From positions 62,001 to 126,000 of the IMG/VR virus record IMGVR_UViG_3300030098_004828: a stretch of DNA of 64,000 nt; one strand, given 5' to 3'. Each line of letters starts with the position of its first letter. Position 1 is the first letter of the stretch. The notes under the pieces were generated by a model, which saw only the letters and a list, made by a program, of their open reading frames with translations, did not search any database and was not told where the DNA came from. Below, piece by piece: positions 20,601 through 39,500 of this stretch. A program made the position numbers and the translations under genes.

Positions 20601-23600
20601 CAAACAACAAAATAAATTACAAGATTCTAAACAATTTAAATGGCAAAAAGATGATGTCTTTTTCTCATTAGAAACTATTTCTACTTTAAGAGATGCTAAT
20701 GTTCCTCATCAATATCTTAGTTTATTAGCTCATAGTCAATATCTTGAGTTTGATGAAATGAGTGATAAAGAATTTAAATCTGTAATGAATGAAAGAGAAT
20801 CAGGTGCTTTAGGTAGATGGAGAAGAATTTTTAGAATTAATGCTTTATATGATCCTAATGTTGGTCATACTGTATTTAGAGATATGAAAGGTAATTGGAT
20901 ATATGCACATCAAATTCCTACATATACTATAAGAGCAATGCAGAAATGGAATGATTTAAATCATCTTGATAACTTAAAAGCAAAAAATTGGTTTAATAAA
21001 AATCATAGTTATTTTTTACAGTCTCCAGATTTTAGAGCGATGAGTAAAAAAGGTATGCATAGAACAACTAGACTTTTAGGAGGAAAGATGACTTCTATGA
21101 AAGTTAAAGATAATAAGTTAATAGAAATGAGAATGAAAGATGAAGCTCCTGCAAAAGGTGTTTCAACAGGTGAAATGTCTCCTGCTCAAATATATTCTTC
21201 ATTAGCTAATATGATGTTGAAATTCTATAATGCTGAAAATCAAGAAGTTACTACTGTAGTAGACGAAGATAGAAACGGTTATGAATTTGCCTTAATGACA
21301 AGTCTTTTAAGAACTAGATCAACATCTAATACATTTGATTTTGGAGATTTTCCTGTGTTAGATGCTGTAATTAAAAATAAATCAGGACAAAGTATTATAA
21401 ATCCTGAGTTTGTTGAAATGGTTATAAGATGGATGATTCAACCTCAATATGAAAGAATAAGATTAGAGAATGCAAGATTTAATAATGTTAATGAAGGTAT
21501 TCCATTAACAAAAGAAATAATAATAAACTATAATGATTTTGCAGATCCTACAAGTGATCTTACTTCTATATATCTTCAAACTGATTTATTAGATATTGTA
21601 AATATAGCAAGTGGTATAAAGAAAATAAAATTACCAAAATTTGTTACAGAAGCTGAAACAAAAGATATACTTAGTGGAAAGCAAACAGCATTCTTAAGAA
21701 CAGCTGAAGGACAAGGTAAGATAGGTTTATTTGGTGAAGGGAAAAGAGCTGTTGTAGAAAGTGAAGAGGGTACATTTGTTCTTACTTATCATGGTTTTAA
21801 AAACTCAGATGCTTTTGATGATATAAATGAAATAAAAGAAATGTTTGGTGCTAGAATTTTAGATAAGAAAACTCTTACTCATACTGAAGCTATAAAAGTT
21901 GGTAATGAGTTTTGGTGGACAGATATGAAAGTAATTAAAAATTTCTTTAGTCAGAATCAAGCTAAAAAAGAATCATACAAAAGACATTTATATACTATAA
22001 AACCTTTAGATGCATATACAGGAATGTCAGGAAGTTTGGCAGAAGAACTTTTACAAAGACAAGCTTTAGAGGTAAATAAATGGTTTGGAAGTCATAAAGA
22101 TGAAAATTTTGCAGAAAAAGTTGCAGAAGAAGATGTTGTAGTTGTATTTGGTGCAAATAGCCTAGGACTTCATGGAAGAGGAGGTGCTGGATTTGCAATG
22201 GGAAAACAAAGAAGTTTAAAACAAATAGAAGAAGTAGAAGATGGTACTGTAGGAGATTATGCAATTAAAGGTAAGACAGGTATTATGCAAGGATCTAAAG
22301 GTCTTGGATATGGATTAATTACTGTTTCTGGAAAGCCAAAAGGAAGATATGGTGGAGCAAGCATGACAACAATAGAAATAGTAAATGAAATAAAAAATTT
22401 ATATTCTTTAGCTGAAAATAATCCTGAAACAACATTTAAAGTTCTTTATGAATTAGAAGAAAATGAAAAGAGTTTAAATGGATATACAGGTCAAGAATTA
22501 GCAGATATGTTTGTATCGGCAGGTGCTATTCCAGAAAATATACAATTTAATGAAACGTTTGCTGACTTATTATATGTATCAAAAGATACAGGATCAAGAA
22601 GCAGATTAATGGCAGATGTTAATACTAAACTTACTGAAGATGCACAAACATTAGCACAAGATGGTGTGACATTCAAAAAATTTAGAGAAGAATTTCAAGG
22701 ACCTAATGGTGAATCATTAGTTGAAATTGTTACAAATAGATTACAGGCAGATTTTGATGCTTGGCATATTTCTTTAAGAGACACAGGTGCATTAGATTTA
22801 ATTAATCCTATGCTTAAAAAAGATGGATTAACAAGTAATTCAGGTAAGAAAAATAAGAAAACTAAATTAGCAAATAAATCTTTAGGTTTAATACCAGGTA
22901 ATGCTACACATAACTTAATGCAAATATTTCTTAATGATTATTTTAATACAAAAGCAGCAATGGCTTTATTATTTGGAGATGAAGCAAAAGTTTTAGGAGG
23001 TTCTCAAGATAAAACTAAAAGAGGCCCTGCTCTTAATTATGGAGGAGATAATGTATCTTCACAAGTTGCTTCTCCAGAAAATGGAATTCCTACTCCTGTT
23101 AATAAATTTAAAATTTGGGTTTATGATGATACTGTAGCACAAGATATGTTTATGGGAACTGAGATAAAAACAAATGACGCTTATGTTCTTGCAACTACTT
23201 TTGGACGTAGAGCTATAGCATGGGGATTAGGTATAGGGCAATTAGCAATGTATCCTATGATAGATGAGATTGAATCTAATCAAGAAGGTGGTATGTCTGC
23301 CACAAGATATTTAGGCAATAAAGAAACTGGAGAAGAAGGTTATAAAAAGTTTGGAGCAAATTTAGCATCATTAAAACTTGCTTATATGGATGGGAGCAGT
23401 ATGCTTAAAATGACTGTAGGATCTGCTACTCCTGAAATGATTAGTCATTATGATGGTACACCTATGGAATCATCCATACCATTGTGGAATATGATGGAAA
23501 AAATGAGACAATGGGAATCTAAAAATCCAGGTCAATTTGTATTAGCGGTTCCAAGATCTGCAGCTAAAATGTTAAAAGTAAATCCAGCAAATATTAATGA

Positions 23601-26600
23601 TGCATTTGGTGAACCTAATCAATTTCCTATAAGTGAACAAAGTTTAACTGAAGCAACTGCTGAAAATCTTTATCTACAAGTTGTAAATCCAACAAATAAA
23701 ATGGAAGGTCCTGATCCAAGACAAAAGAAAACAGGTATAACACAAGAACAAGATTTTGTTAATATACATGGAGAAGATATAGAAATTCCTGGATGGGAAG
23801 TTATTAAGGATGGTAAAAAACAACCTATTACAATTAAAGAAGTAAAAGAATTTTATAAGGATAATACCAAAGCACGTGTAACCTTACAGTTTACAGGAAG
23901 AAGAAATTTAATGTTTGACTTAGGAACAGGTAGAGATAAAAATATAATTGAAACAGATATTGATCCTATAAATATAACAGTAAATTGGCGTGCTTTCTTA
24001 GAGTATGCACGTACTTCATTGATGTCTGGTAAAACTCCAGAACAATTTTTAGAATTTTTTGAAACAACTATAAGAGGTCAAAATGCATATGAGTTAAATA
24101 ATCCTTTAACACTTCCTAAATTTGATGAATTGTTTAGAAGCTTCTTTGCTAAAGGAGTATTAGGTGAAAGAGTTCCTGGTCATGGTTTAACTCTTATAGG
24201 AAATGGTAGAAAAGTTGTAAAGCAAGTAGTTGCTCTTGATAAAAATGATCAACCTGTTCACGGTAAGTCTAGAGTTATTAGAGATAAACATTGGAAACTA
24301 CTATATAAAAAAGGAGAAAAAATAGCAGTAGCAGGTATGAATTATGCTAGAGAAAATAAAGTAATAGATGGTAAAAGTGTTTTTGTTGGTGAATTTGATG
24401 GGTTAAAGGTTGGTGATTATTATATAGATGTGTTAAGAACAGACGTTCCTCAGTATATAAAACATAACTCTAATGGTGAATTTATTTCAGATCATAATAA
24501 GTGGGAATTAAGTGGTGAAGTTAGAACAGAAATTATGGTTCCTTTTCATAATCCACATGCTGAAACCATACCTATAGATCAAGAAATTCCAGAGTCTCTT
24601 TCTACAATGTATATGACACGTATTCCTACAGATGATAAAAAATCTCAAGATGTAGGTAAAGTTGTTAATGAACTTCCTGTATATATGGGATCTGTAGTTA
24701 TGGCATCAAATGAGCATATATTTAGATCAGGTGCCGATATGGATAATGATAAAGATTATACTCAAATTTTTGATACATATGTAGATGACAAAGGTGTTAT
24801 ACAAATTTATGGAGATCAATTTCATAGTAAAAAAAGAAAGAGTATAGATAAAAAATATGAAGAATATATTAGAAAAGTTGTAAGTGAAGCAAAGAAAAAG
24901 AATTCTAATATGAGTTATGCTGTTAAAGTATTTAAAGAAAGACTTTCTCAATTTAAACAAGAATCAGGTGTAATATTAAAAACATCAGAAAAATTAGAAC
25001 AAGAATTTGTAGAATGGCTTTCTAATCTTGATAAAGATAGAAAAGTAAAAGGTAAAAGTTTATTTGCTCAACAGCTTTATAATGCAATGAAAAGATTAGA
25101 TGGGGATAATTTAGATATGCTATCAGCAAAACTTAGATTTGCGTCTATGAGAGGATATGAATATGATATAGTTACTGGTAAATTTATAGATTTATTTGAA
25201 GAAGACATACATATTGATAGTGACTCAAGATATAGTGTTATACAAAAGTTTTATAATAATAATAAAATCCTACAAGGTGCTATGACTTTATTGGGTTTAC
25301 CTTTAACAATGGAACAGTTTATTGAATTTGAACTTAATCATGGATCTCCTAATTTAGGAGCATTAAATAATAATATTTTACAAGCTTCTATAGCTCTTTT
25401 ACAACATGAAGGAATGCGTAAATCACAAGAAAATGGTTTACCAGGAATTAAAAATGAACCTACAACAACTAGTCCTTATGATACAGCTTGGAAATATTAT
25501 GAAGATAATTTGCCAGGTTTATTTAAAAGAAGAGATACATCTAATATTAATGTAGATAATATGGATGGAAAAAGTAAAGCTTTTATGACTAATAAAATTG
25601 CAGAAAAAAATGTTGGAGCTGTTGTAACTCCAAAACAAATATTAGATTTATTAGGAGAACATAATGTTGAATTATTTGTAGAAGATTGGCAAGGAAAACC
25701 TTTACCATATATATCTTTTCAAGGTCATACTTTTAATAAACTTAATACTCAGTATATTATAAGAAATGGTAAGGAAGATAAAATAGATGGTGTTAGAACT
25801 GGAACAAATCTAGCTGCAATGATAAATGCAATGACGGATAATGGAACTCATATGCATGCAGGTAAATTTAATATAACTGCTAATCAAGCAGCATTACAAA
25901 CTTTACAAGCTAAGTTAGGAATGGATATGACTACAATACTTACACTTAGTGATAATCCTATACTTGAAAAATATATTATAATGGGAGCTTTCAAACAACC
26001 TGGTGAACCAGGAACAAGAAAATTAGTGGAAGGTCATATGAGTAATTTAGTTAAGAAGTATGGACAAGATATGTTAGATATAGTTGCTGTAACTGTATTA
26101 GATCAGGAAATAATTAATTCACATATTAATAGTCATCCGGATAATAATCCTGCTGAATATGGTTTTGAAATTATTGATCCTTCTAAAAGCTATGGAGAAC
26201 TATTTAAAAAAGATCCTCAATTAGCTTTAACAAGAGCTGCAGAAGAATATTTAATTCTTCAACTTTGGTTAAATACAAATAGAGTTTCAGACAGTGTATC
26301 TAGAACTCAAAAACCATTAAGACTTCTTAAAGGTCCAGGTAGAAATAGTGAAGAAACTTCTTTTATAATGGAAAATATAAAAGAAATGGGTCTAGATCTA
26401 GATACTTCTAAAAAAGGAAATGATAAGTTTAATAAATTAATAGATCCTATAGATAATATGGCATTACCTTTTGATGCTAGAAAAGCTTTTAGAGATTCTA
26501 TTATGAAAACATATTTAGATATATTCTTTCAAATGGAAAAAAGTTTAGCACCTGCTCTTTTAATAACAGAAACTCCATTCTTTAAAAAAGCTACTGATAT

Positions 26601-29049
26601 AATATTAACTCAACTTAAAAATAAAGCAAAGACGAATGAAAGAAAACATAAGATTAAAAAAGATATATTAAGCTATCTTACAGCACGTGCAGTTAGACAA
26701 CATTATTTAAATAATGGAATGATAAAAGAAGCTCAAGATATGACTAATGGAACATTATATGAAACTTTAAAAATATCTGAAACTCAATTAACAGCATCAG
26801 AAGCTTTAGCAAAACTTAGTGAGTATTATAATGGACAAGAAGAATATAACTTTTTTGCTCAAGGTTTTTTAAGTAGTATTGGTGAAAGATCTCCTATGAA
26901 TGCTTCAGGTATGAGTAAAGTCACATCTAATACTTGGACAAAATTAGAAGATAAGACAGTTAGACATATAAGATCTGCATTTATGAAAGCTTATGATAAT
27001 CCAGTTACACATGATTGGATAATGACTTTGTTACATTATGAACTTGTTAAGAATGGGCTTCAATATACTGCTGATACTTTTATTACTGCAATTCCACCAC
27101 AAGCTTTAGAAGAAGTAATTTCAACAATTACTCCTGTACATAATTTCTTTAAACAACTTCAGTTGTCTGATACAAGAGCAGAAAATTTATTAGGAATGAC
27201 TGTACACCAACTATTACAAGATATGACTCTTGGTTATTTAGGAGCAGAAAAAAACAATAGTATACTTAAAGAGTTGTATGGAAAACCTGTAACAGATTTA
27301 GGATCTCCAGATATGGTTGATGTATATGATGATCAAATAACAGAAGAAATGGCAGATGCAAATCCTAATATATTATTTGTATATGAAGATGTACTTAGAG
27401 GTGGAAAACCTTTAAATGCAAGAATAAGATCTAAAGAAAATGTAATGGGTCTTAGAATGAGAAAGCATTATAAAAAAGATGAAAAAAGTCCTTTCTTAGA
27501 TGCTAATGAACAAACATTAATGAAAGATAATTTTGATAAAGATTTAGCTGCTATTAGAGAATTAATGAATGAAACAAAAGAAGATGGATCACCTCTCTAT
27601 GAAAGTATAGTATTCCCAAGTTTTTATTTAATGGGAGATGTGTATTTAGAAAAACAAGAAGTTCAAGAAGAAACAGAAGAAAAAGAAAAGAAGAAAAAAG
27701 AAAAAGCTCCATATAAAGGTAAGTCAGAGAAGGTTTATAAACATATGCGTGAACAAATAAAAAAACAATTTGGTTTTAATATACAATCAGGTAGAGTTGC
27801 TGCCTCTGAAAGTATTAAAGCTAAACGAGCTAAACAATTAAAAGAAGCTGCAATAGCAAAATATCCTAATGAAGGTCTTCTTGTTTTAAGTATGAAAAGT
27901 GGATTAATTCCTGCACAAGATATTAGATCATTAAAAAGAAAAGCAAAAGGAAAAGGTAATAAGAAAGAGGAAAAGAAATTTAAAGCAATGTTGGGTGAAG
28001 CTGTTAAAAAGAATAAAGAACAATGGAAAACTAATTTAACAACATTAAGAGAGGGTGGTGTTAGGATAATAGAAATAGAAGATCCGAATGATGCAAATGC
28101 AACAATCTTAGTTATGGAAGCTCCTCTTTATTATAGAGAATTGGAATATACCTATACAAAAGATGCTAACACAGGTAAGAAGGTTAGAAATCTTTCAGGT
28201 ATTACAACTTATAGATTATTGCAATTTAATGATCCTACAAGACAAGAAGAAGAAATAGAAAACTTTTTTGAATTTGATGCTAGATTAGAAAAGAAAGGTA
28301 TAACAACTCCAAATATTGTCTATGCTACAGAAGCAATATATGAAGCTGTTAAAACTACATTTTCAAATTTACAAAACCCAATGGTAGGAAACGCTTTATT
28401 ATTACCTACTCAAGAGCCTATATACTATGAAACAATAAGAGAAAGACAAGAAGAAATTAAAGAAAGATATGATAGTTTGTTTAATAAAAAGAAAGGTTTT
28501 ATGGGTATTGATATATCAGCACAAGTAGCTAATTTACTTGCAAGTAGAATGGCAGCTATAACTGGAGGAAAAAAACCAGATATTAATAAAGTTCTTACAT
28601 CATCATTACCTCAATCAGCTTTTAAAAATGAAGTAAAAGATGTTCAATACACACAAGAAATAAAAGCTACAAATGAATCTGTAGAAGTAGGTGGTAAAGA
28701 AATTACAAGTCAAACTCCTGCAGAAAAATTATTAATGATGATGGCAAAAGGAGCTATAAAACAACAAGAAATTAAAAAACAATTGCCAAGCTCTACTAAA
28801 AAAAGTGTTACTAAAAAAATTGATCAATCAACTCCTGAAACAAGTAAATATGAAGGAAGATTAAGAGGTATTTGGAAGAGTTTAAGTCAAGATAAAAAAG
28901 AAGCAATTGCTAATGTTTTTGGAGAAGGAGATATAGCAATGACTGAAGTTAGTGAGCAAGAGTTTGTAAATTATTATTTTAGATATAAAAAGTATAACCC
29001 AACCTTTACGTTAAAGGAATTCATTAAAAAAATCAATGAGTGTTACTAG
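11674..29049 (+). CDS. Giant virion-associated RNA polymerase polyprotein (5791 aa)
   Basis: YMTRIPT (about 24610-24630) followed about 35 aa later by GADMDNDK (24730-24753), matching the R.P...DxDxD two-barrel RNAP catalytic loop (DFDID in crAss-like virion RNAPs). Also HEAGH zincin motif, two macro-like segments and N-terminal hydrophobic stretches. Confidence 0.85.
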   Translation: MAEETQIIPEGSGKTGNVFEEGLNVNSTPNDANLDLTSSSVVDNLPYDNTPLHTPGWKNISDVVAEQGEYFAGPPGMNIDPSIWADVGRMDKMLAEHGLGNNNNFYNPLPGQSAGSFNPFAESSGILDPNTLEGRRAKLTQVINNAQQNTPGRNPAYRDPIYYGAKAFNLDRYTSHPAFDRLGFHPFADNDAYYNANSSKWENFQRTWGAFGSMFHEAFTSPWRSIGDFLEGDWNRADYIGASAMEDAMRIGRSTKGGVGGFFNDLFLNFSYTLGIISNVVLEEMALAGITYLSGGTAAPAAGARTVYNVGRIMRTGDKINDARKASQRTLEAMKNYNNVNNFWKFTRGVGRWTMPQTAQFYRRLRTAGSTVDNMNNLGKLRLGAGALYRDLRMANLAWSEAKMEAGLVEMQLRNKKYQEYRRANNGAHPDEEWLNALNVDALNAAQTTIFWNAPFIHLTNQFVFPGLGRGFRGVGRQFDDSLDAVPDAIQRELKKQKPSGMPGKFYDAGKGVSRIKSEGLKGGLTKGANYALRYFGANVGEGAQELYQEAVAVGVEHYYGSLFDMRLSTGLDLQRADMELSAQQGSKLFWDSFQEGANSQMGWNGFKVFMSGFMMGGLARMVQTPVLDWAPNYVNKKWNQAKYDKYEKQKEKFKANALEYLENGRKDPLHVFDKTKINVLNQREANQQMYAASFSGQAMEHYDAKDWAKFEHFETYVSMGKTHHFIDIIDDYLALDNKSFREAFPVETYPDSVAKIRSRLEQNKKEINEMKRKYEERKELYSNPFSEDRFEEGTVLYQQEKLRRLSYDHARKLAMYVDSSFERAVERINNMYKALSSGDLKVLKNIQANELDPLMGKRQLEAELELLNVELTGTLSQKDIKFKTKKKELLTEFSNIIHNPKYQTPKTKVFSKTHMPKLRKAFTDYLNFLAKAKNEFVESKNIDKALNAIVDTQWLEKRSGDLHDAARILMNPKKLEQVADRINFSMRRVWNTMRDKNHQIKEIDKYIRETERMAVLQKLSEEDIYPHPIQTMIYLEQGIKPTLFYNKKGIIDQLNQPEEHKKILSIFNLSDDTSEDGKDAKKENAEEIEKQAKESKEKDEVEKEETDLTVGGTGEVPDEKKKEKEEEVEYEVPKNTDSDSTIVDLVPKNNDKPPASLGKVLSSVNNDTKIQNVLNNKYEQWAANQALEDPNRSIMTQELWEQDETLGGAIKSARKELFKLYAKKVSLKDRQSTPFDTWLKSNAANLEVDDIIEKYPLATSSVQDIMIGDVTAVQPMPEEKLNPSLESIVSDGKKDKTGIWILKSSIELDPDADPKELYTVTDNNKIDLSEKFFHLDPASLDPDGYDTLDEAQRAKDKILKWLGKPEDRDFVFDGIQFRRGMSIVKGEDLNDWKNAEQEDKGNYEWTVMANKKTVENNNNVWIQKKVGNTIEKGDKPIVLEEGDWAADGWVIEFDAKELSQKEKQKTKTKLQKTEPLQFFAITESKGETTYTKIKRHEKLLKSMTPEKQKNLVLRIMRMEDFEEKMKIPVKKLTPLEFETKQPNKRIRKGYVKHRVFLEYDGYDIAELQGIHSSVILDENNKELNPMTMSNKQILETFVMGEHDKARGVTEQEFADTVRNNYKQGYLIMKKIDEYMGENLATEIPFYIEGKKNPVLEDIGITIQAGNIAYSTSVANRSTFDQLEYKSADSKINKDGSKGSQVIYSLYKDKNGDWREAPFDNFDQATTENEDYRDSQLELIENDRKMVDLDIKSLGRYVMVIRDDRGVYTYAALQPREKTSVELEEMFTQLKERHIETLKENYVSVEGTNKRMIKKGKKYTDQGFGMQYNNEFNSNFSETHFIASKTKGDVIVLGVDPYGNINLEYFNRITKHETRVSLNEEEVATASNFLELLNLLNEKWKKTEWAKAYKKVEGTKKAVKDVNRPNFKIQPIDFRISLPRTITTEQLSDVKILIQPEIRKNIRTVLSYTKQSEIDMLTANASSIQYRHSFLKTSSEKKIESDEREAINEPEANKIGTTDSVTTMFTNYLKNGKASNELLDSLSDALVAAQQDMSVYAAQALDIVKKAGLTHHDVKNALDFVYSFKFDSDFVNPITQKVIGTKQDLMEYVHTIALGKKKVTEYTQEELDNMDSVFESIDNLHDVVQAVNKPILQRANQLLKDDNYKVELQAMVDNKLYKSMPGGTSTQKAKQKGPAVSIVNKEKQFNLKAYQKAQEELEQLNNALEDAAFDEAVVRQEYINLKTNKAKNDFIQTLEDTGDFRILENKNKWNRRNVLLELMNQYEADIKGIDPNLAGKFLPEVLKSIDEHDIARRQEFIEFMRENLPQFMVDRIDNLEWNSEKMGALMGAFVIDLKSVGQGLTLDNLVGKVYLSKTSKFDYHEAGHATMRMLMTDEEIATWMATARKNVRAQMRSKEGYKIGENADGSSIIVKNVKQALEHLRLQSYMYSQMSDNLLEKRLYEEDIWDNFQLYKENPKNKKVRKEYKGFFSWLVEMIKKVFKFFTTSYWNSTRSSGLGGPYDSLFEKIDNGKYRTRAIQKNQFTEGFLEGGLSFKYALKPIPTGRPKVLATSKLIEGQEQEVLKQVTEYFPPEEEARYVANIVKIYLELLDKMEGKYIPNKVLLDAVNIVTESLNPKRQIFQDMDPGDYRKIKSQLKKDYAALSSPEAKRALMKSARVALTRHDQFQDAFDEMIMDKDHELEGRTNETSWDEQLQEIGPEKTASRFVRDLIATTVLTDQAGQPLGDKKYGFKWLDDAKTIPAVQPVDYMKAFNALLLAGEGIENHYERFRTIWNQTHYKPDLKAVMVNILNLLGVKPAQLRGNSWMQNVEKNGTAKQQWYLGRIIKAFDTVRVDYYNLIQSDSGNTKGYVNIINAAHKDDASNQLRSATNVYLGLDSKWQGEGKESRKLHRRATGVLNDWNNILSEGKPMTDAKLARKSKEISTRLRERLGIELHPATIENSIINFIELSTEYQKQLFKQQNKLQDSKQFKWQKDDVFFSLETISTLRDANVPHQYLSLLAHSQYLEFDEMSDKEFKSVMNERESGALGRWRRIFRINALYDPNVGHTVFRDMKGNWIYAHQIPTYTIRAMQKWNDLNHLDNLKAKNWFNKNHSYFLQSPDFRAMSKKGMHRTTRLLGGKMTSMKVKDNKLIEMRMKDEAPAKGVSTGEMSPAQIYSSLANMMLKFYNAENQEVTTVVDEDRNGYEFALMTSLLRTRSTSNTFDFGDFPVLDAVIKNKSGQSIINPEFVEMVIRWMIQPQYERIRLENARFNNVNEGIPLTKEIIINYNDFADPTSDLTSIYLQTDLLDIVNIASGIKKIKLPKFVTEAETKDILSGKQTAFLRTAEGQGKIGLFGEGKRAVVESEEGTFVLTYHGFKNSDAFDDINEIKEMFGARILDKKTLTHTEAIKVGNEFWWTDMKVIKNFFSQNQAKKESYKRHLYTIKPLDAYTGMSGSLAEELLQRQALEVNKWFGSHKDENFAEKVAEEDVVVVFGANSLGLHGRGGAGFAMGKQRSLKQIEEVEDGTVGDYAIKGKTGIMQGSKGLGYGLITVSGKPKGRYGGASMTTIEIVNEIKNLYSLAENNPETTFKVLYELEENEKSLNGYTGQELADMFVSAGAIPENIQFNETFADLLYVSKDTGSRSRLMADVNTKLTEDAQTLAQDGVTFKKFREEFQGPNGESLVEIVTNRLQADFDAWHISLRDTGALDLINPMLKKDGLTSNSGKKNKKTKLANKSLGLIPGNATHNLMQIFLNDYFNTKAAMALLFGDEAKVLGGSQDKTKRGPALNYGGDNVSSQVASPENGIPTPVNKFKIWVYDDTVAQDMFMGTEIKTNDAYVLATTFGRRAIAWGLGIGQLAMYPMIDEIESNQEGGMSATRYLGNKETGEEGYKKFGANLASLKLAYMDGSSMLKMTVGSATPEMISHYDGTPMESSIPLWNMMEKMRQWESKNPGQFVLAVPRSAAKMLKVNPANINDAFGEPNQFPISEQSLTEATAENLYLQVVNPTNKMEGPDPRQKKTGITQEQDFVNIHGEDIEIPGWEVIKDGKKQPITIKEVKEFYKDNTKARVTLQFTGRRNLMFDLGTGRDKNIIETDIDPINITVNWRAFLEYARTSLMSGKTPEQFLEFFETTIRGQNAYELNNPLTLPKFDELFRSFFAKGVLGERVPGHGLTLIGNGRKVVKQVVALDKNDQPVHGKSRVIRDKHWKLLYKKGEKIAVAGMNYARENKVIDGKSVFVGEFDGLKVGDYYIDVLRTDVPQYIKHNSNGEFISDHNKWELSGEVRTEIMVPFHNPHAETIPIDQEIPESLSTMYMTRIPTDDKKSQDVGKVVNELPVYMGSVVMASNEHIFRSGADMDNDKDYTQIFDTYVDDKGVIQIYGDQFHSKKRKSIDKKYEEYIRKVVSEAKKKNSNMSYAVKVFKERLSQFKQESGVILKTSEKLEQEFVEWLSNLDKDRKVKGKSLFAQQLYNAMKRLDGDNLDMLSAKLRFASMRGYEYDIVTGKFIDLFEEDIHIDSDSRYSVIQKFYNNNKILQGAMTLLGLPLTMEQFIEFELNHGSPNLGALNNNILQASIALLQHEGMRKSQENGLPGIKNEPTTTSPYDTAWKYYEDNLPGLFKRRDTSNINVDNMDGKSKAFMTNKIAEKNVGAVVTPKQILDLLGEHNVELFVEDWQGKPLPYISFQGHTFNKLNTQYIIRNGKEDKIDGVRTGTNLAAMINAMTDNGTHMHAGKFNITANQAALQTLQAKLGMDMTTILTLSDNPILEKYIIMGAFKQPGEPGTRKLVEGHMSNLVKKYGQDMLDIVAVTVLDQEIINSHINSHPDNNPAEYGFEIIDPSKSYGELFKKDPQLALTRAAEEYLILQLWLNTNRVSDSVSRTQKPLRLLKGPGRNSEETSFIMENIKEMGLDLDTSKKGNDKFNKLIDPIDNMALPFDARKAFRDSIMKTYLDIFFQMEKSLAPALLITETPFFKKATDIILTQLKNKAKTNERKHKIKKDILSYLTARAVRQHYLNNGMIKEAQDMTNGTLYETLKISETQLTASEALAKLSEYYNGQEEYNFFAQGFLSSIGERSPMNASGMSKVTSNTWTKLEDKTVRHIRSAFMKAYDNPVTHDWIMTLLHYELVKNGLQYTADTFITAIPPQALEEVISTITPVHNFFKQLQLSDTRAENLLGMTVHQLLQDMTLGYLGAEKNNSILKELYGKPVTDLGSPDMVDVYDDQITEEMADANPNILFVYEDVLRGGKPLNARIRSKENVMGLRMRKHYKKDEKSPFLDANEQTLMKDNFDKDLAAIRELMNETKEDGSPLYESIVFPSFYLMGDVYLEKQEVQEETEEKEKKKKEKAPYKGKSEKVYKHMREQIKKQFGFNIQSGRVAASESIKAKRAKQLKEAAIAKYPNEGLLVLSMKSGLIPAQDIRSLKRKAKGKGNKKEEKKFKAMLGEAVKKNKEQWKTNLTTLREGGVRIIEIEDPNDANATILVMEAPLYYRELEYTYTKDANTGKKVRNLSGITTYRLLQFNDPTRQEEEIENFFEFDARLEKKGITTPNIVYATEAIYEAVKTTFSNLQNPMVGNALLLPTQEPIYYETIRERQEEIKERYDSLFNKKKGFMGIDISAQVANLLASRMAAITGGKKPDINKVLTSSLPQSAFKNEVKDVQYTQEIKATNESVEVGGKEITSQTPAEKLLMMMAKGAIKQQEIKKQLPSSTKKSVTKKIDQSTPETSKYEGRLRGIWKSLSQDKKEAIANVFGEGDIAMTEVSEQEFVNYYFRYKKYNPTFTLKEFIKKINECY
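24610..24753 (+). other. RNA polymerase catalytic motif region (RIP...GADMDND)
   Basis: Asp triad D4355/D4357/D4359 with the conserved upstream Arg-x-Pro. Confidence 0.85.
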
Positions 29050-29069
29050 ATAATTAGTATATTAGTATT

Positions 29070-32000
29070 ATGGCATGTGTAAATAGAAATACAACAGAAT
29101 ATAAAGTTTTATTAGAGGAATTTAAGAGTCCTATAGCAGTTGACTTATTAGTTGATAATTGGCAAAAGTTTAATAAAAAAAATACAATGCCTACAGTAAG
29201 TGAACTTAAAGATTACAATAATCAAAGAAAGAAACTCTTTAGTTTACAAAAAAGACAGTTTACAGAATCAATTGTTGTAAAGCTATCTGATTTAGGAATT
29301 ATAAAAAAAGATTATAATATTTCAAGGAATGGTGATTTTTCAGGATCAATTGAAGATGGTGGAATGTGGCATGAAGAACTTGATGAAGAATATGTAACAA
29401 TACTAGAAGATCAATTAAGAAATGAAGAGATAGAACCTATGGATTATGATATAGCCTTGGAGCAGGCATATGTTTATAAGTATAGAGGAGCATCTTTAGA
29501 AACTTTAGAGCAAAATAGAAACAGATTAATGTCTTTTTTAGATGCATTTAATCTTCCTTCAGATTTTATAAATGTTAGAGTTAGAAGTTTGGAAGAAAGC
29601 ATGTTTATAGAAAACGAACCTTTAATAAGATATGCTGATGAGATTGCAACAAAAGAAAATAAAAAGATATATAGAAAAAAATTACCTATAAAACTTACAC
29701 GTCCAGCAATTAATATTATTAGGGAGTTAAATAAAAAAGGAAATAAAGCTTTAATTGTAGGTGGTGCTGTAAGAGATTCATTAAGAGGAGTTGAAAATAA
29801 AGATATTGATATTGAAGTATATGGAATTAGTTATGGTAATCTAGAAAACTTGTTATCAAAATATGGTAGAGTTAGTGTGGTTGGAAAATCTTTTGGTGTT
29901 ATTAAATTTGAAGATGAGTCAGGAGTAGAATATGATTTTTCTGTACCAAGAAGAGAAAGCACTAAGGGTGTTGGTCATAAAGATTTTAAAATAGATGTAG
30001 ACCCTAATATGTCACCTGAAGAAGCTGCTAAAAGAAGAGACTTTACATGGAATGCTTTAGCTTATGATCCTATTAAAGAAGAAATACATGATTATTTTGG
30101 TGGTATAAAAGCTATACAAAGAGGTACAATGGAAATTACTTCTGAACAATTTATAGAAGACCCCTTAAGAGTTCTTAGAGCAATGCAGTTTCAATCCAGA
30201 TCCGGAGATAAAATTTCTGCAAAAGATTATGGAATAATGAAACAAATGGTAAGACAGGGAGCATGGGATAACTTACCTAAAGAAAGAATATCTGAAGAGT
30301 TTATGAAGTGGGCATTAAAGGGAAAAAATCCTTCAATGATATTTAACTTCTTAAGAAAAACAAATTTAATGCAAGAGCTTCCTTATATTGGTCTACTAAA
30401 AGGTGTTAAGCAGGATAAAGAATGGCATCCAGAAGGAGATGTAGAAGTTCATACAGGTTATGTTATGGACGCTGCAGTAAAAATAGCTGACAGAGAAGGA
30501 TTAAAAGGAGATGATAGAGCGGTATTAATATTTGCAGCTTTAACACATGATTTTGCTAAACCTCAAACTACAGAAAAAAATTTAATAGAGTATCAAGAAA
30601 AAGAAACAGGGAAGACACAAACAAGAATGGCAATTACTTCTAGGGGTCATGAAAAAGCAGGTGGGCCTTTAGCAAAAGAATTTTTAGAATCAATAGGAAT
30701 TAAAAAATCTATTATAGATAGAGTTGTACCACTTGTTGTAGAACACTTACAACATGTTAGTATAGCAGCATTACCTGAAGAAAAAGGAAAAGTAACTGCA
30801 GTAAAAACATTGGCTAGAAAATTAGAGCCTTCTAATATACAGGAGCTTTTATATTTAATAGAAGCAGATAATTCTGGTAGACCTCCATTACCTAAAGGTC
30901 TTGGTCAAGCTGGTGTTGAATTAAAAAGATTAGCTAAAAATGTAAAAGTTACTACTAAACCTAAAAAAGATTTATTACAAGGAAGAGATCTTATTAGTTT
31001 AGGTATGAAACCAGGTGAACAGTTTTCAGAAGTTTTAAATAAAGCAAGGCGTGCAGAAGATGAAGGTATATTTAATACAGTTGAAGGTGGAAAACTTTGG
31101 GTTAGAAAAAACATATTAAAAGAAGATGTAGAACTTGAAGAAGTTAAACCTATGAATGTTAAAGTTGAAAGCAAAGATGATTCAATGGAAACGGACATGG
31201 AGCCTTTAGCTAATGATAATTATGAATATCTTCCTGAATATGAATTTAATACAAATAGAAATACTTTAGAAGTAGATGATATTATAACAGAAGATATTTC
31301 TAAAGATCTTACCTTTACAAGAACTATAATAAATCATTTAGAAAGAATATTTCCTGATATAAATGTACAATATATAACAGAGTTGGAATATAAAGCAATG
31401 AGACTTGTAGAACAAGATGTTACAAGAGAGTTGTTAGAAGCAGAAGGAATGGAGACAATAAAAGAGGATGAAGTTAAAAGCTTTTTTTATGATGGAACTG
31501 CTTATATAATAAAAGATAGAATTACTGCAGAAACAGCTATAGAAGAAGTATTACATCCATTTGTAAATGCATTAGAGAGTGACAATAAAGCACTATTCAA
31601 TTCTTTATTAAAAGAAGCAAAATTAAATTTTCCTACTTTAAGAGCTCAAATAGAAGGTGTATATACAGATGAAAAAGGTTTTTCTCCTTTAGAAAGAAAC
31701 TTAGAGCTTGTTACACAAGCTTTAACAAGACACTTTAAAAAAGAATATGAAGATACACCAACTACAAATTGGAGATCTAAAATTAAAGATTTAATAACAT
31801 GGTTAGCAGAAACTGTTAAAAACATTTATACTTATATTACAAGTGGTTTTTTAAGTGTAAGCCCAGAACAAATAAGTTCTGCAAATAACTTAACAGATGT
31901 TGCTAAACTTCTTAATACAGAAGGTTTATTAATTAGATTTAAAGGAGGTAAAAAAGATAAAGGTGCCTTTAGATCATTTAAACAATATAGTCTTACTGAG

Positions 32001-35000
32001 TCAAGAAAAGAACAGTATAATAAAGCTTTAGCTTTAGCTAAAACAGATCTTCAAAAAGCTACTATAGAATTCTTTTTTAATAGACAGATAACAAATCCTA
32101 AACAATTTAGTCAACTTGTTGCAAGTCATACTATAGAAGGTATAGCAGGACCATTAGTTACATTAAATAAAAAAGATCATATTTATTATGAAATTCCAAA
32201 TCTATTAGAATATACTAGTGTTACAACAGCTATTAAAGGTTATATGACATCTAAAAATCCTCATGTAGTTAAAAAGGGAGAAACTATAAATGACATAATT
32301 AAAGAATTTGAAGTTAGTAGAAAAATTTTAGACAGAATGAATCCTGAAATTAATCTTGATACTATTAAAACTGGTGATTCTGTAAACATACCTGATCAAG
32401 ATTTTGTTCTTAATAGAAAAATAGGAGATGATTTTGATTCTATTGTAGATGGATTAGCTGCTTTTAAATCTTTTAACGAACTTCCTGCAATGAAAGTTTT
32501 AAATAAAGAAGTAGCAGAAGAAGCTTATAAAGAAGCATCACTTGTACTTACAGGTATAAGAGCAGCTGGTGCAGTTCTTATACCTCAAGTTATAGTTGCA
32601 GATCCTATAAATAAAATAGCAGGTAGTATTGATATATTAGCAATATATCCTGATGGTACTTATCAGGTTATAGACTTAAAAACAAGTAGAAATAGTGTTG
32701 TAGGATTAAAAAGTAAATACAAAACTGTAGCATATCCTGTTAACGTTGGTAGTATATTTACAAAAGGAAAGGTTGAAAGACAACACAAAATAGTAGATGG
32801 AAAAAAGAAATATACAGAAGAATATAATCCTACTATTCATTGGCCAGAATTTACTACAGAACAACAACACAATATGCAGGTTAATCTTTATAATAGAATG
32901 TTACATAATATGGGTTATGTTCAAAATACTGCTCCATCTATAACATTACATATTAAAGTTGAAGTTGAAGGTTATGGTAAAGATCAAAAGTTTTTAGATG
33001 AATTTAATTTTGAAGAATCTAATTTTCATCCTATGTCACAAAATCAAGATAAGGTTGATAAAGTTATTCCTGTCAAAGTTAATCAAGAAATGAGAAAAGT
33101 ATTACACGAGGTGTATAAAAATTCTCCTGAATTTAATCCAGTAAGAGGTGATAACTTTTTAACTGATGATCAAGCTCAACCTGAATCAACAACTAATATA
33201 GATTCTGCTAAAGGTAAAGAAGAGTATAAAGCTGTAATGAAAATTACAAAAGATTATGTTGGACATCTTACAAACAGAGAAGAATCAATTAAACAACTAA
33301 CTAAGCATATTAAAAATATTGACAAGTATGCTAAAATGGAATTAGAAAGAATTCAAGTACACACAGATATGATAACTTTAGCATTTAAAAAAGGTAAAGT
33401 TAGACAGGTTTACACTAGACTTCTTAAAGAAAGTATTGATCAATTAACAGAAGTTAAAAATTATTTTTTAGATCCAAAAAACTTTAATAAGAATGAATAC
33501 TTAAAAAGAATAAATCACTATGAAACTTTTATAGATTCTTTTGAAGGTCTTACTACAATAGATAAAGAATCTTTAAAACAATTAAATTCTGAGCAACGTG
33601 CATTAAAAGATGAATTGGTGTCTTTAATACAAGATCTAAAAGGTAGAATAAATACGAAAGGACAAATAGTTGAAGTTGGTATTTTACAAACTGCACAAGA
33701 AAATTGGATGAAAGCTTTTGTAAAACAAAGAAGTTCCGGGAAAATGATTCAAGGAACTGAATATGGTTTTGGTACTGCACAAGAAAGTCAAGTAATTAGA
33801 GACTGGTCAGATGAAGATTTAAATGAATTATTACAATGGGCATATGAGATACAAGGAGGAGAGGCAAATCTTGGAGATATGTCAACATCTAGTGATACCT
33901 TAATGGCATTGGCTGATCAGTTTTATTCAGAAAAAGTTCAAGAGGTTATTGATATAAGAGAAAAATTTGATTCAATGATTAGTGTTTTAGAACGTAGACT
34001 TGAAAGATTAGGATCAAAAAATCCTCAAACTAGATATGAGTTTATGTTAAATGAAGATGGTTCTATTGTTAAAGAATTAGGAGGTGAATATTCTAAACTA
34101 AAAAGAGAGCTTATGGATCTCATGATGAATCATGATGGTAGTAAAAGAGAATATATTATAAAAGGTTTTGATGGAGAATACACTAAACAAGAAATAGAAC
34201 ATAATGAAAAATTGTTTAAGGATAAAAAAAGAGCAGGTGATTTTTGGAGACCAGAAATTATTGTAGAAGGTGTTGTTGACCATGGAGAATATCATCAATA
34301 CTCTCCAGAATATATAAAAGAAAGGAAAAAGTTTATGCGTTATAAGTATTGGAAGAAAAAAGGTTGGGGAGAATGGCAACAAAAACCTGGTGTTTCTGAT
34401 AAGGCTTTTAGAGAATTTTGGAGCAAATGGCATGAAACAAGAACATATAATAAACCTCAAATAATAAAAGGAAGATTTACTGGTAAAATGGAAACAGCAA
34501 CTAAGGACTTTATAAAATGGACAGTTGATGGTAAACCAACCAAGATACCAAGATTAATTACAGGTTCTGGTAAAAGCATGCGTAGTAAAAGATATGATAA
34601 AATAATGAATCCTAAAACAGAATTGGGTAGAGCTGAAAAAGAGTTTTATGAATTTTGGATAAAACATTGGGAGGGACCTAAAGGTATGTTAAGTAGAATG
34701 CCAGAAGGGGTTAGAAAAATGATGACAGATAGATCTCCTTTAGTAGTTAGTAGATTAGCTAAAGAATTAAAAGGTAAACCTAGTTTTATTAGAAAATTAT
34801 GGGCAAAAACTATTGGTGGAAGTTTAAAAGATGGTGTAAAAAGTTTATTTGGTGATAATACATTTGATGGTAAAAAAGTTCTTGTAGATGAATATGGATA
34901 TGTTGTAGACAGCATTCCTATGTATTTTATAGGTAAACCAAAATTAAAAGAAGATTTAGAAAAAATAGAAAAAGCACTTAATAAGCTTGATTCTCAACTT

Positions 35001-36851: not shown

Positions 36852-37021
36852 TGCCAGTAAACAAAAAAATAATAAGAATAGATAAAGATAAGTACGAAGA
36901 ACTTAAAAGTAACTTCAGTACTATCTTTGATCTATATATATCTGATAATGACTATTACGTTATTGGAACCTTTGAAGATCTTAAGTCTGTTGGTGTTGAT
37001 CCGGGCGTTCCTTTTGTTTAA
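36851..37021 (+). CDS. Small hypothetical protein (56 aa), not in ORF track
   Basis: ATG overlaps the upstream TAA (TAATG coupling). Translation: MPVNKKIIRIDKDKYEELKSNFSTIFDLYISDNDYYVIGTFEDLKSVGVDPGVPFV. Confidence 0.55.
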   Translation: MPVNKKIIRIDKDKYEELKSNFSTIFDLYISDNDYYVIGTFEDLKSVGVDPGVPFV

Positions 37022-38988: not shown

Positions 38989-39020
38989 TATTTTAGTATT
39001 TAATAGTTAATAAATGTAGA

Positions 39021-39498: not shown

Positions 39499-39500
39499 AT

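What the first reader, a model, noticed from the sequence alone, without database searches (positions are those of the whole stretch)
29680..31110. Intact CCA-adding/HD tRNA-repair enzyme embedded in a giant virion ejection-type protein
Seen: residues about 205-680 of the 2593-aa ORF carry the class II CCA-enzyme motifs in order (GGAVRD/DIDIE, RRDFT, EDPLR with the nucleotide-selecting EDxxR, ERI.EE) plus an HD domain (HPEG..H, HD, GHE, EH, AD..GR), with no stop on either side. Established: the HD-containing CCA enzyme of the E. coli type both dephosphorylates damaged tRNA 3' ends (2',3'-cyclic phosphodiesterase/phosphatase) and rebuilds CCA. Free-standing cca genes occur in some large phages. 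Several defence or toxin systems attack the tRNA acceptor end (toxSAS such as CapRel pyrophosphorylate CCA; MenT/AbiEii-type nucleotidyltransferases extend it). Inference: as part of the third gene of a crAss-like ejection cassette, this enzyme would be packaged and injected with the DNA, protecting tRNA before any phage translation. I know of no description of a virion-delivered CCA enzyme.
Basis: partly seen in the sequence, partly recalled or inferred. Interest (0 to 1): 0.92.

Follow-up and report, generated by a model that had tools for sequence, protein, structure and literature searches.

The report
tRNA-end repair enzyme inside phage cargo protein
A marine crAss-like phage has a complete, apparently active tRNA CCA-adding/HD repair enzyme spliced into one of the giant proteins that such phages pack into the virion and inject with their DNA, and the same module recurs in many other giant phage proteins, which suggests an undescribed way of delivering tRNA repair at the very start of infection.

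Summary
Residues ~195-690 of the uninterrupted 2593-aa ORF (29070-36851) are a full-length class II tRNA nucleotidyltransferase plus HD domain. All catalytic residues are intact, the AlphaFold model has pLDDT 94, and its best matches are solved CCA-adding enzymes.

The carrier is the homologue of crAss001 gp49, a virion cargo protein detected by mass spectrometry. It sits directly after a 5791-aa gene with an RNA-polymerase-like DxDxD motif.

The enzyme is an accessory insert. In 75 full-length orthologues the same site holds a 42-73-aa linker; here it holds 641 aa. A sister genome joined in the same contig lacks the insert.

The module is not a one-off. Its closest relatives sit in other giant phage proteins: an orthologue of the neighbouring 5791-aa gene, MuF head proteins, a tape-measure protein, and ART-PolyVal polyvalent proteins. 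RNA ligase, kinase or 2H/Acb1-like domains are often alongside.

Best reading: a virion-delivered tRNA 3'-end repair enzyme, a new module type for polyvalent or cargo proteins. Packaging, activity and the counter-defence role are inferred, not shown. No paper in the searched library describes it.

The parts
29070..36851 (+). 2593-aa (299 kDa) ORF. It is the gp49-like giant cargo protein that carries the CCA/HD insert.
   Evidence: ORF list. There are 363 orthologues by the C-terminal region. Homology to the cr1_1 last giant gene and to crAss001-type gp49.
29070..29321 (+). Conserved N-terminal domain, aa 1-84. It is shared by orthologues and by some other giant proteins. It may be a packaging or targeting element, but that is inference.
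   Evidence: Aligns to orthologue aa 1-84. An HMM of it also hits P0030 and P0204.
29322..31244 (+). Insert of 641 aa (aa 85-725) at insertion hot spot 1. It consists of an acidic linker, the CCA/HD module and a second acidic linker.
   Evidence: The orthologues have a 42-73-aa linker at this site. Acidic composition of the flanks.
29691..31127 (+). CCA-adding/HD module. The HMM envelope is aa 208-686 and the homologous region is about aa 195-690 (56 kDa).
   Evidence: Family and sequence searches. Structure model with pLDDT 94 that matches CCA-adding enzymes.
29751..30128 (+). Pol-beta-type head domain carrying motif A (GGAVRD...DIDIE), the flexible loop, motif B (RRDFT) and motif C. Motifs D (EDPLR, 30156-30170) and E (ERISEEF, 30282-30302) follow in the neck.
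   Evidence: Pfam PF01743, E 6.7e-19. Invariant residues in alignments with 46 free-standing and 41 fused homologues. Motif positions.
30423..30881 (+). HD phosphohydrolase domain with H461, H493-D494, H527, H559 and D600.
   Evidence: Pfam PF01966, E 1.5e-6. These residues are invariant or nearly invariant in A2. Positions.
32262..32393 (+). Weak LysM-like segment of the scaffold, aa 1065-1108.
   Evidence: Pfam E 0.0024 here, below the cut-off. LysM is found in 5 of 21 orthologues, best E 6e-9.
32622..32687 (+). PD-(D/E)xK nuclease-like motif of the scaffold, aa 1185-1206. D1188, D1202 and K1204 are invariant.
   Evidence: Invariant columns. Weak PDDEXK_1 hits in 11 of 21 orthologues. The motif is also shared with cr1_1.
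35037..36848 (+). Conserved C-terminal domain, aa 1990-2593. It includes the stretch homologous to crAss001-type gp49 (36075-36602) and one hydrophobic helix (36384-36437).
   Evidence: Homology. Hydropathy scan. The structure model is poor and finds no fold match.
11674..29049 (+). Upstream 5791-aa giant ORF, the likely virion RNA polymerase homologue (SGADMDNDK at aa 4353-4361, DMDND at 24736-24750). Its orthologue P0186 carries the same CCA/HD module.
   Evidence: The DxDxD motif resembles SGSDFDVDK of the 276.8-kDa crAss001-type protein. P0186 aligns over its whole length and has the module at aa 3161-3638.

Best explanation
The 2593-aa gene encodes the gp49-type cargo protein of a marine crAss-like phage with a genome unit of about 121 kb. 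Phages of this kind pack such a protein into the capsid and eject it into the cell ahead of or with the DNA.

At a linker after its first 84 residues, this protein has acquired a complete class II tRNA nucleotidyltransferase with an HD phosphohydrolase domain, of the E. coli Cca type.

Proposed mechanism:
1. The module enters the cell as part of the cargo protein and refolds.
2. Before any phage gene is translated, its HD domain removes 2',3'-cyclic or 3'-phosphate groups from damaged tRNA 3' ends.
3. Its nucleotidyltransferase site then rebuilds the CCA end.
4. This keeps tRNA chargeable when host nucleases or tRNA-end-modifying defence toxins are active.

Shown here: domain identity, intact catalytic residues, the full-length fold, the insert status, homology of the carrier to a proven virion protein, and recurrence of the module in other delivery scaffolds.

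Inferred: packaging of this protein, its activity, its substrate, and the counter-defence purpose.
For: Enzyme:
- Pfam, PHROG and NCBIfam hits.
- All motif A-E residues and all HD residues are invariant across 47 sequences including free-standing enzymes, and are conserved in 42 fused copies.
- The model has pLDDT 94. It aligns over about 480-490 columns to T. maritima, B. stearothermophilus and psychrophilic CCA-adding enzymes (TM up to 0.78), ahead of E. coli poly(A) polymerase.
- A low-confidence loop between motifs A and B marks the flexible loop.

Carrier:
- The C-terminal domain matches the cr1_1 last giant gene (E 1e-26) and the 154.8-kDa crAss001-type protein (E 1e-15).
- gp49 (154.5 kDa) was detected in crAss001 virions (PMC10172136).
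- Gene order is the same: RNA-polymerase-motif gene, then the gp49-like gene.
- The DNA polymerase's best cultured hit is the crAss-like Cellulophaga phage phi14:2.

Selection for delivery rather than for one fusion partner:
- A module 56% identical sits in an orthologue of the neighbouring 5791-aa gene (P0186).
- It also sits in a different giant gene of a related phage (L006).
- It is found behind Phage_Mu_F head-protein domains (P0039, P0040, P0044), in a PhageMin_Tail tape-measure protein (P0041), and with ART-PolyVal or Kinase-PolyVal domains.
- On a tree, the window's module lies in a 97%-supported clade of 9 with no free-standing member, and in a 99%-supported clade of 49 that is mostly fused.

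Link to RNA repair and anti-defence:
- The same polypeptides carry RNA ligase (P0001), AAA_33 kinase (P0013, P0028, P0034) or 2H/Acb1-like phosphoesterase (P0039, P0040).

Other points:
- The module is not an artefact.
- Injected phage proteins with anti-defence roles have recent precedents (titles listed).
Against: - No experimental datum exists for this phage. Packaging is inferred from a 176-aa, 32%-identical stretch shared with crAss001 gp49, plus synteny.
- Only a few cargo copies enter per virion (about 6 each is an illustrative figure used in the capacity calculation of PMC10172136, not a measurement). The catalytic capacity against the far larger cellular tRNA pool may therefore be small.
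- The protein must pass the tail at least partly unfolded and then refold.
- The module scores below every NCBIfam equivalog cut-off. CCA versus A-adding, CC-adding or poly(A) specificity cannot be settled by sequence.
- The insert is rare in this phage group: 1 of 80 IMG/VR loci. It is dispensable, and its benefit is probably host-specific.
- No defence system is tied to it by any data here.
- A late gene product is also present in the producing cell, where it could act before packaging.
Confidence: 0.5

Rival explanations
1. The enzyme works in the producing cell, not after injection. As part of a late protein, it matures or maintains host tRNAs (and any tRNAs the phage itself encodes) during the heavy late translation. 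The fusion is only a way of expressing it, and packaging is incidental.
For: - Free-standing CCA enzymes are common in phages.
- In a Zeta crAss-like phage, a free-standing CCA enzyme lies with the tRNA genes in the replication block (PMC12386605).
- Relatives of this phage carry 1-2 tRNA genes without an encoded CCA.
- Cargo genes are late genes in crAss001 and phi14:2 (PMC10136315).
Against: - No tRNA gene was found in the ~85 kb of this genome unit that could be read.
- The module repeatedly sits in proteins whose hallmark is delivery (MuF, tape measure, polyvalent, two different crAss cargo genes) rather than in arbitrary late proteins.
- The fused copies form their own clades.
Confidence: 0.2
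2. The nucleotidyltransferase acts on RNA other than tRNA ends. For example, it could tail or cap the 3' ends of the early transcripts made by the co-injected virion RNA polymerase. Alternatively it could polyadenylate host RNA to speed its decay.
For: - The carrier and its neighbour are RNA-polymerase-associated cargo, and P0186 has the module inside the polymerase-like giant protein itself.
- Class II enzymes include poly(A) polymerase, and E. coli PAP is among the sequence and fold matches.
- pcnB models score E 7e-33.
Against: - CCA-type models and structures score better than PAP ones: 161.7 versus 114.2 bits, and Foldseek 9e-15 versus 3e-12.
- From my own knowledge, an HD domain is a feature of Cca-type enzymes and not of PcnB.
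- The nearest free-standing relatives are 450-480-aa enzymes of the phage tRNA nucleotidyltransferase family, PHROG 2244.
Confidence: 0.12
3. The HD domain is the real effector. It would degrade a nucleotide signal or a cyclic-phosphate product of host immunity, and the nucleotidyltransferase half would be a passenger.
For: - 2H/Acb1-like phosphoesterases that could act on cyclic nucleotides accompany the module in MuF proteins.
- From my own knowledge, the E. coli Cca HD domain has cyclic phosphodiesterase and phosphatase activities.
Against: - Every catalytic residue of the nucleotidyltransferase half is invariant in fused copies.
- Several fused relatives keep the head and neck but give no HD hit (P0047-P0054).
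Confidence: 0.06
4. Assembly chimera: the enzyme gene was joined in frame to the giant gene by mis-assembly.
For: The IMG/VR contig that holds the window is itself a join of two related genomes.
Against: - The join lies at the primase gene, far from this ORF.
- The same 10.4 kb is 100% identical in a Tara contig, and the 3' junction is in an ENA contig.
- Codon-position GC is uniform across the gene.
- The reading frame is open across both junctions.
- The same kind of fusion occurs in dozens of independent contigs.
Confidence: 0.02

Closest known systems
Multifunctional CCA-adding/repair enzyme of the E. coli type (class II tRNA nucleotidyltransferase with HD domain; NCBIfam PRK10885)
   Same: Same order of head, neck and HD-containing body. 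All motif A-E residues and the H...HD...H...H...D set are present. It is the best NCBIfam match, and the fold matches solved class II CCA-adding enzymes.
   Different: The score is well below the equivalog cut-off (161.7 versus 451 bits), and only profile positions 4-279 of 409 align. It is not a free protein but residues ~195-690 of a 299-kDa phage protein. Activity is untested.
Free-standing phage tRNA nucleotidyltransferases (PHROG 2244; annotated in Cronobacter phages GAP31 and CR3, Vibrio and Pectobacterium phages, Halogranum tailed virus 1, and jumbo phages, PMC7824862)
   Same: The same family over its whole length (profile 3-386 of 392; 27-36% identity to isolates, up to 54% to metagenomic free-standing forms).
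   Different: Those are separate genes of 330-590 aa, usually in nucleotide-metabolism or tRNA regions. Here the enzyme is an in-frame insert in a structural or cargo gene.
Polyvalent proteins and MuF-fused effectors of phages and conjugative elements (Iyer, Burroughs, Anand, de Souza & Aravind 2017, PMC5512222)
   Same: A giant polypeptide that combines unrelated enzymatic domains, is encoded with virion genes and is predicted to be injected. Relatives of this module sit next to the hallmark ART-PolyVal, Kinase-PolyVal, PBECR2, RadC, 2H and Phage_Mu_F domains.
   Different: The main text of that paper does not mention CCA-adding enzymes. Its Pol-beta NTases are minimal, NTox45-like, restricted to conjugative elements and predicted to modify proteins. 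Its supplementary domain list was not held, so it could not be checked. The window's carrier has no detected ART, SNF2 or zincin peptidase domain.
Crassvirales RNA-polymerase-associated cargo proteins (crAss001 gp47, gp49, gp50; PMC10172136)
   Same: The C-terminal domain is homologous to the 154.8-kDa gp49-type protein. The position directly after the DxDxD-bearing giant gene is the same. The neighbouring replication module is similar and the DNA polymerase is related to that of phi14:2.
   Different: Only about 30% identity over about 180 aa to gut crassviruses. The protein is twice as long as gp49. The gut homologues found here show no CCA/HD domain.
T4 Pnkp/Rnl1 tRNA repair and T4 Alt (functional analogues, from my own knowledge)
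   Same: Pnkp/Rnl1 is a phage-encoded healing and sealing system for tRNA cut by a host defence nuclease (PrrC). Alt is an enzyme packed in the head and injected with the DNA.
   Different: T4's repair enzymes are made after infection and act on the anticodon loop. Alt modifies proteins. Here repair of the 3' end and delivery by the virion would be combined in one protein.

Membership tests
Class II CCA-adding enzyme (tRNA nucleotidyltransferase) | Pol-beta head with motif A (GGxVRD ... DxD metal carboxylates) | tested here: met
   GGAVRD at aa 231-236 and DIDIE at aa 245-249. G, G, R, D, D, D and E are invariant in A2. PF01743 E 6.7e-19.
Class II CCA-adding enzyme (tRNA nucleotidyltransferase) | Motifs B (RRD), C, D (EDxxR nucleotide-selecting pocket) and E | tested here: met
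   RRDFT at aa 322-326, HDYFGG at 340-345, EDPLR at 363-367 and ERISEEF at 405-411. All key residues are invariant or nearly invariant.
Class II CCA-adding enzyme (tRNA nucleotidyltransferase) | Full head-neck-body-tail architecture able to hold a tRNA acceptor arm | tested here: met
   The model (pLDDT 94) aligns over 475-495 columns to full-length CCA-adding enzymes, including a tRNA complex (5hc9). Target-normalised TM is 0.62-0.78.
Class II CCA-adding enzyme (tRNA nucleotidyltransferase) | Specificity for adding C, C and A, as opposed to A-only, CC-only or poly(A) | tested here: inconclusive
   CCA-type models and structures rank first. A flexible loop between motifs A and B is present. 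A-adding, CC-adding and PAP structures also match at E 1e-10 to 1e-13. No sequence rule is decisive.
Class II CCA-adding enzyme (tRNA nucleotidyltransferase) | Template-independent CCA addition to tRNA in vitro or in vivo | not testable with these tools
   Needs an enzyme assay or complementation of a cca deletion.
E. coli-type multifunctional Cca (NCBIfam PRK10885 equivalog) | HD-domain metal ligands H...HD...H...H...D | tested here: met
   H461, H493-D494, H527, H559 and D600 are invariant or nearly invariant. PF01966 is above its cut-off.
E. coli-type multifunctional Cca (NCBIfam PRK10885 equivalog) | Score at or above the curated equivalog cut-off | tested here: not met
   161.7 bits against a cut-off of 451, and only profile positions 4-279 of 409 are matched. 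It is therefore filed as a relative that probably works like Cca, not as an equivalog.
Crassvirales gp49-type virion cargo protein | Sequence homology to gp49 and its orthologues | tested here: met
   Pairwise E 1e-15 to the 1349-aa (154.8 kDa) crAss001-type protein and E 1e-26 to cr1_1 gp_19429. The tblastn database search gave E 2e-9 to 4e-20.
Crassvirales gp49-type virion cargo protein | Position directly downstream of the giant gene with the RNA-polymerase DxDxD motif, next to an oppositely oriented replication module | tested here: met
   w5791 (SGADMDNDK) is followed by w2593. The crAss001-type 2412-aa protein (SGSDFDVDK) is followed by the 1349-aa protein. RNR, DNA polymerase, exonuclease and primase lie downstream. 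The RNA polymerase fold itself was not confirmed.
Crassvirales gp49-type virion cargo protein | Physical presence in virions and ejection into the host | not testable with these tools
   Shown only for crAss001 gp49, by mass spectrometry (PMC10172136). This phage is uncultured.
Polyvalent protein (Iyer et al. 2017) | Two or more biochemically disparate domains in one polypeptide of a phage or conjugative element | tested here: met
   Nucleotidyltransferase, HD phosphohydrolase, a PD-(D/E)xK-like motif and a weak LysM in one 2593-aa phage protein.
Polyvalent protein (Iyer et al. 2017) | Presence of the hallmark hub domains (zincin-like peptidase, ART, SNF2 helicase, methylase and others) | tested here: not met
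   None was detected in the window's protein. They are present in other carriers of the same module (P0001, P0011 and others) and in a few orthologues (ART-PolyVal in P0124 and P0167).

The most novel reading that the evidence does not exclude
Phages of several unrelated architectures pre-load their virions with a tRNA 3'-end repair enzyme and inject it with the genome. The carriers seen here are crAss-like cargo proteins, MuF head proteins, tape-measure proteins and polyvalent proteins. This would be a first-minute counter-measure against tRNA-directed host immunity. The CCA/HD module would then be a previously unrecognised, mobile component of the injected-effector repertoire, one that hops between cargo genes.
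Probability: 0.4. Interest if true: 0.85.

Novelty: new variant of a known kind. Interest (0 to 1): 0.62.

Why it matters
tRNA is a frequent target of anti-phage systems such as anticodon nucleases, toxSAS enzymes and nucleotidyltransferase toxins. The known phage answers are made only after infection starts: the phage's own tRNAs, and Pnkp with RNA ligase.

A repair enzyme that arrives with the DNA would close that time gap. It would also extend the list of injected phage enzymes from protein and DNA modifiers to RNA repair.

The finding gives a concrete, easily cloned 56-kDa module and a set of natural carriers (MuF, tape measure, crAss cargo) on which delivery and activity can be tested. 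It also shows that crAss-type cargo genes serve as insertion platforms for accessory enzymes. That helps explain their extreme size and divergence: gene-3 proteins are 32% identical between two genomes whose flanking genes are 80-91% identical.

Tried and rejected
- **Upstream giant genes.** Pfam and PHROG scans of the four upstream giant ORFs gave almost nothing: only phrog_2072 and a sub-threshold DUF7831 in w5791.
- **RNA polymerase identity.** PDB sequence searches with the rest of the 2593-aa protein, with crAss001-type gp49 and with w5791 found no solved relative, including the phi14:2 polymerase. The polymerase identity of w5791 therefore rests on a motif resemblance only.
- **C-terminal domain structure.** The prediction was poor (pLDDT 61.8) and Foldseek found nothing.
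- **Phage tRNAs as substrate.** No tRNA gene was found in the window or in the other readable parts of the contig. About 40 kb of the unit could not be read.
- **Internal promoter or terminator.** The scan found fewer promoter-like sites than in shuffled sequence, so there is no support for separate expression of the module.
- **Jumbo phage.** The 245.6-kb contig first suggested one. This was rejected because the primase recurs at the contig ends and at 124.5 kb, and a second, divergent copy of the cargo gene lies at 211 kb. The contig is two ~121-kb genomes joined.
- **Drobysheva et al. 2021.** The paper could not be read because it is not held.
Full report
**1.

Window 29070-36851 (+) is one uninterrupted ORF of 2593 aa.

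Family searches agree on what the region is:
- Pfam PolyA_pol head, aa 228-353, E 6.7e-19, and HD, aa 461-572, E 1.5e-6, both above the gathering score.
- PHROG 2244 'tRNA nucleotidyltransferase' over aa 225-666, covering 3-386 of 392 profile positions, E 8.5e-65.
- Among NCBIfam models the best is the multifunctional CCA addition/repair protein (2.2e-47, 161.7 bits). It scores ahead of pcnB (114 bits) but below every equivalog cut-off.
- By sequence, the nearest solved structures are the Aquifex A-adding enzyme, the Thermotoga and Bacillus CCA-adding enzymes and E. coli poly(A) polymerase.

In an alignment with 46 free-standing homologues, the metal carboxylates, RRD, ED..R, the motif E arginine and the HD-domain histidines and aspartates are all invariant and all present in the window's copy. 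The same residues are conserved across 42 copies embedded in giant proteins.

An AlphaFold model of aa 195-700 has mean pLDDT 94.0 and pTM 0.91. All 46 PDB matches with E <= 0.001 are class II tRNA nucleotidyltransferases. Full-length CCA-adding enzymes rank first (3h37, 1miv, 6qxn; target-normalised TM 0.67-0.78), and E. coli PAP ranks lower.

The module is therefore a complete enzyme with intact catalytic residues. Its exact product (CCA versus A, CC or poly(A)) cannot be read from sequence.

**2. It is not an assembly artefact**

- The window is part of IMG/VR contig UViG_3300030098_004828.
- A Tara Oceans contig (CEUO01039859.1, 61 kb) is 100% identical over window 25070-35469 and spans both junctions.
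- An ENA contig encodes aa 646-2593 at 99.85% identity.
- Third-position GC is 0.129 in the insert and 0.128 in the rest of the gene.

**3. What the carrier is**

The phage is crAss-like:
- Downstream, on the opposite strand, lie ribonucleotide reductase, dUTPase, DNA polymerase, exonuclease, an ATPase, an HNH endonuclease and primase.
- The best cultured match of the DNA polymerase is the crAss-like Cellulophaga phage phi14:2, at 35% identity.

The carrier is the gp49 homologue:
- The last ~600 residues of the 2593-aa protein match the C-terminus of the last giant gene of Crassvirales phage cr1_1 (E 1e-26) and of the 1349-aa 'RNA-polymerase subunit' of crAss001-type phages (E 1e-15).
- That 1349-aa protein weighs 154.8 kDa. 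This identifies it as gp49 (154.5 kDa), one of three RNA-polymerase-associated cargo proteins found in crAss001 virions by mass spectrometry (PMC10172136).
- In crAss001-type phages gp49 follows a 276.8-kDa protein with SGSDFDVDK. In the window, the 2593-aa gene follows a 5791-aa gene with SGADMDNDK.

More precisely, the gene is the gp49 homologue, the last of five consecutive large genes (1743, 875, 1216, 5791 and 2593 aa).

The scaffold itself has these features:
- An invariant PD-(D/E)xK-like motif (D1188, D1202, K1204), with weak PDDEXK_1 hits in 11 of 21 orthologues.
- A LysM in some members.
- One conserved hydrophobic helix near the C-terminus.

The fold of the C-terminal domain could not be established.

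**4. The enzyme is an accessory insert**

- A search with the C-terminal region found 363 orthologues, typically 1850-1950 aa, mostly from marine and other environmental metagenomes. None of the top 119 has a PolyA_pol domain.
- The query aligns to them at aa 1-83 and at aa ~725-2590, so aa 85-725 replace a short linker.
- In 80 IMG/VR loci, 75 full-length orthologues have 42-73 aa at this site and the window has 641 aa. No CCA/HD module occurs in any of the other 79 loci, nor within 10 kb of them.
- A second hot spot near aa 925-935 holds other inserts in some orthologues, including ART-PolyVal.
- The IMG/VR contig turned out to be two related ~121-kb genomes joined at the primase gene.
  - The second unit's gp49 orthologue (1983 aa) lacks the insert and is only 32% identical.
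  - Its flanking genes are 80-91% identical at the DNA level.
  - The cargo genes are therefore hypervariable between close relatives.

**5. The module is a recurrent passenger of delivered giant proteins**

- A length-restricted search found 54 other proteins of 1434-4071 aa with the module at N-terminal, internal or C-terminal positions. Almost nothing else in them aligns to the window's protein.
- An unrestricted search of 1.84 billion cluster representatives gave 2178 hits at E <= 1e-30. Among the 150 best, 38 have at least 500 aa of flanking sequence, 21 have 150-499 aa and 91 are free-standing. All hits above ~55% identity are embedded.
- On a tree of 165 modules, the window's copy lies in a 97%-supported clade of nine with no free-standing member, and in a 99%-supported clade of 49 of which 34 are giant. 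Free and fused states are strongly clustered.

Contexts of the other carriers:
- P0186 (5722 aa) is an orthologue of the window's neighbouring 5791-aa gene over its whole length. It carries a module 56% identical to the window's, at the site where the window's protein has a phrog_2072 domain.
- A related phage (L006) has the module, split by a nested AAA_33 kinase, in the giant gene after its w875- and w1216-like genes.
- P0039, P0040 and P0044 are Phage_Mu_F head proteins followed by 2H/Acb1-like phosphoesterase, RadC or PBECR2 plus CCA/HD. P0040 is encoded near a capsid gene.
- P0041 combines a PhageMin_Tail tape-measure domain with the module, within a run of genes that gave no Pfam hits and ahead of a >3490-aa ORF.
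- P0001, the closest module (62% identity), is DUF4314 - ART-PolyVal - WGR - RNA ligase - CCA/HD.
- P0011 joins Topoisom_I, Kinase-PolyVal, the module and ART-PolyVal, next to a methylase and an SNF2-type helicase.

The common factor is not one partner protein. It is membership in proteins that are, or are predicted to be, packed into the particle and injected.

**6. Mechanism**

The best-supported reading is that the module enters the cell as part of the cargo protein and repairs tRNA 3' ends before phage translation begins. The HD domain would clear 2',3'-cyclic or 3'-phosphate ends, and the nucleotidyltransferase would restore CCA.

What is shown: enzyme identity, intact residues and fold, insert status, homology of the carrier to a proven virion protein, hopping of the module between cargo genes, and co-occurrence with RNA-repair and anti-defence domains.

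What is inferred: packaging of this protein, refolding after ejection, substrate, and purpose.

Weak points:
- Few copies enter per virion.
- The insert is rare in this phage group.
- There is no link to any specific defence system.

Rivals:
- Action in the producing cell on tRNA maturation. Relatives carry 1-2 tRNA genes without an encoded CCA, but none was found in the ~85 kb of this genome that was readable.
- Action on non-tRNA RNA, such as the virion polymerase's early transcripts.
- The HD domain as the real effector.
- Chimeric assembly, which is essentially excluded.

**7. Comparison with what is known**

- Free-standing CCA enzymes are known in large phages (PMC7824862).
- Polyvalent and MuF-fused injected effectors are known (PMC5512222).
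- That paper's main text does not mention CCA-adding enzymes. The Pol-beta NTases it describes are minimal, protein-directed and confined to conjugative elements.
- Searches combining CCA-adding enzyme or tRNA nucleotidyltransferase with crAss, polyvalent, MuF, virion or injected found no description of this fusion.
- The nearest precedent is the SU10 proteomics table. It lists a free-standing class II CCA-type protein, grouped under early gene products, as detected by mass spectrometry (PMC4281155).
- All viral proteins with this fold in BFVD are free-standing, 330-586 aa.

I rate this as a new variant of known kinds, namely phage CCA enzymes and polyvalent or cargo proteins. It is of good but not extreme interest, because the key functional claims are still inference.

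Noticed in passing
window 62506-63486 (primase); L011, L044, L070, L101: The source contig (IMG/VR UViG_3300030098_004828, 245,646 bp) is not a jumbo genome. The primase gene recurs at both contig ends and at 124.5 kb. A second gp49 orthologue, only 32% identical, lies at contig 210,962-216,910, while the genes beside it are 80-91% identical in DNA to window 36851-45905. The contig is therefore two related ~121-kb genomes joined, with hypervariable cargo genes.
   Followed up: partly
window 11674-29049 (5791-aa ORF); motif at 24736-24750; phrog_2072 domain at 22120-22572: This giant ORF has a DxDxD motif (SGADMDNDK) that resembles SGSDFDVDK of the crAss001-type 276.8-kDa protein, so it is the likely virion RNA polymerase. 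No family or PDB sequence search confirmed this. Its orthologue P0186 carries the CCA/HD module exactly where this protein has a small domain of unknown function. That small domain is shared with crAss-like 'RNA polymerase' genes and with Vibrio phages.
   Followed up: partly
window 32622-32687 and 32262-32393: The conserved scaffold of the gp49-like family has an invariant PD-(D/E)xK nuclease-like motif (D1188, D1202, K1204) and, in some members, a LysM domain. Neither is annotated in the crassvirus records I saw.
   Followed up: partly
window 29070-29321: The N-terminal ~50-84 residues are conserved across the gp49-like family. They also occur at the N-terminus of otherwise unrelated giant proteins (P0030, P0204). 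This may be a capsid-targeting or packaging signal.
   Followed up: no
P0028, P0034 (L006), P0032, P0033, P0223 and many 600-900-aa homologues: Homologous CCA/HD modules are interrupted at a few fixed positions (profile positions ~75, ~190 and ~246) by inserts of 50-660 aa. These include an AAA_33/Zeta-type kinase nested inside the head domain and, by the precomputed Pfam list, PF00334 (NDK, name from memory). Some of the inserts may be inteins. Many homologues also duplicate the last ~50 residues of the module.
   Followed up: no
P0093, P0114, P0122, P0124, P0167, P0168, P0173 (orthologues): A second insertion hot spot in the gp49-like family, at query aa ~925-935, holds inserts of 300-1230 aa. 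These include ART-PolyVal. P0173 has a Zeta/AAA_33 kinase near its N-terminus. The family behaves as a platform for accessory enzymes.
   Followed up: partly
L053 2919-3087; L040 172-246: Related phages carry one or two tRNA genes (Leu-taa and Met; Arg-tct). None has a complete encoded CCA end.
   Followed up: partly
window 81-11657: Three further large ORFs (1743, 875 and 1216 aa) precede the 5791-aa gene and have no Pfam or PHROG match. w875 and the N-terminus of w1216 have homologues in the related locus L006.
   Followed up: partly
window 59840-61009 (-): A 389-aa HNH endonuclease (phrog_1314, E 6e-70) sits among the replication genes. It may be a homing endonuclease.
   Followed up: no
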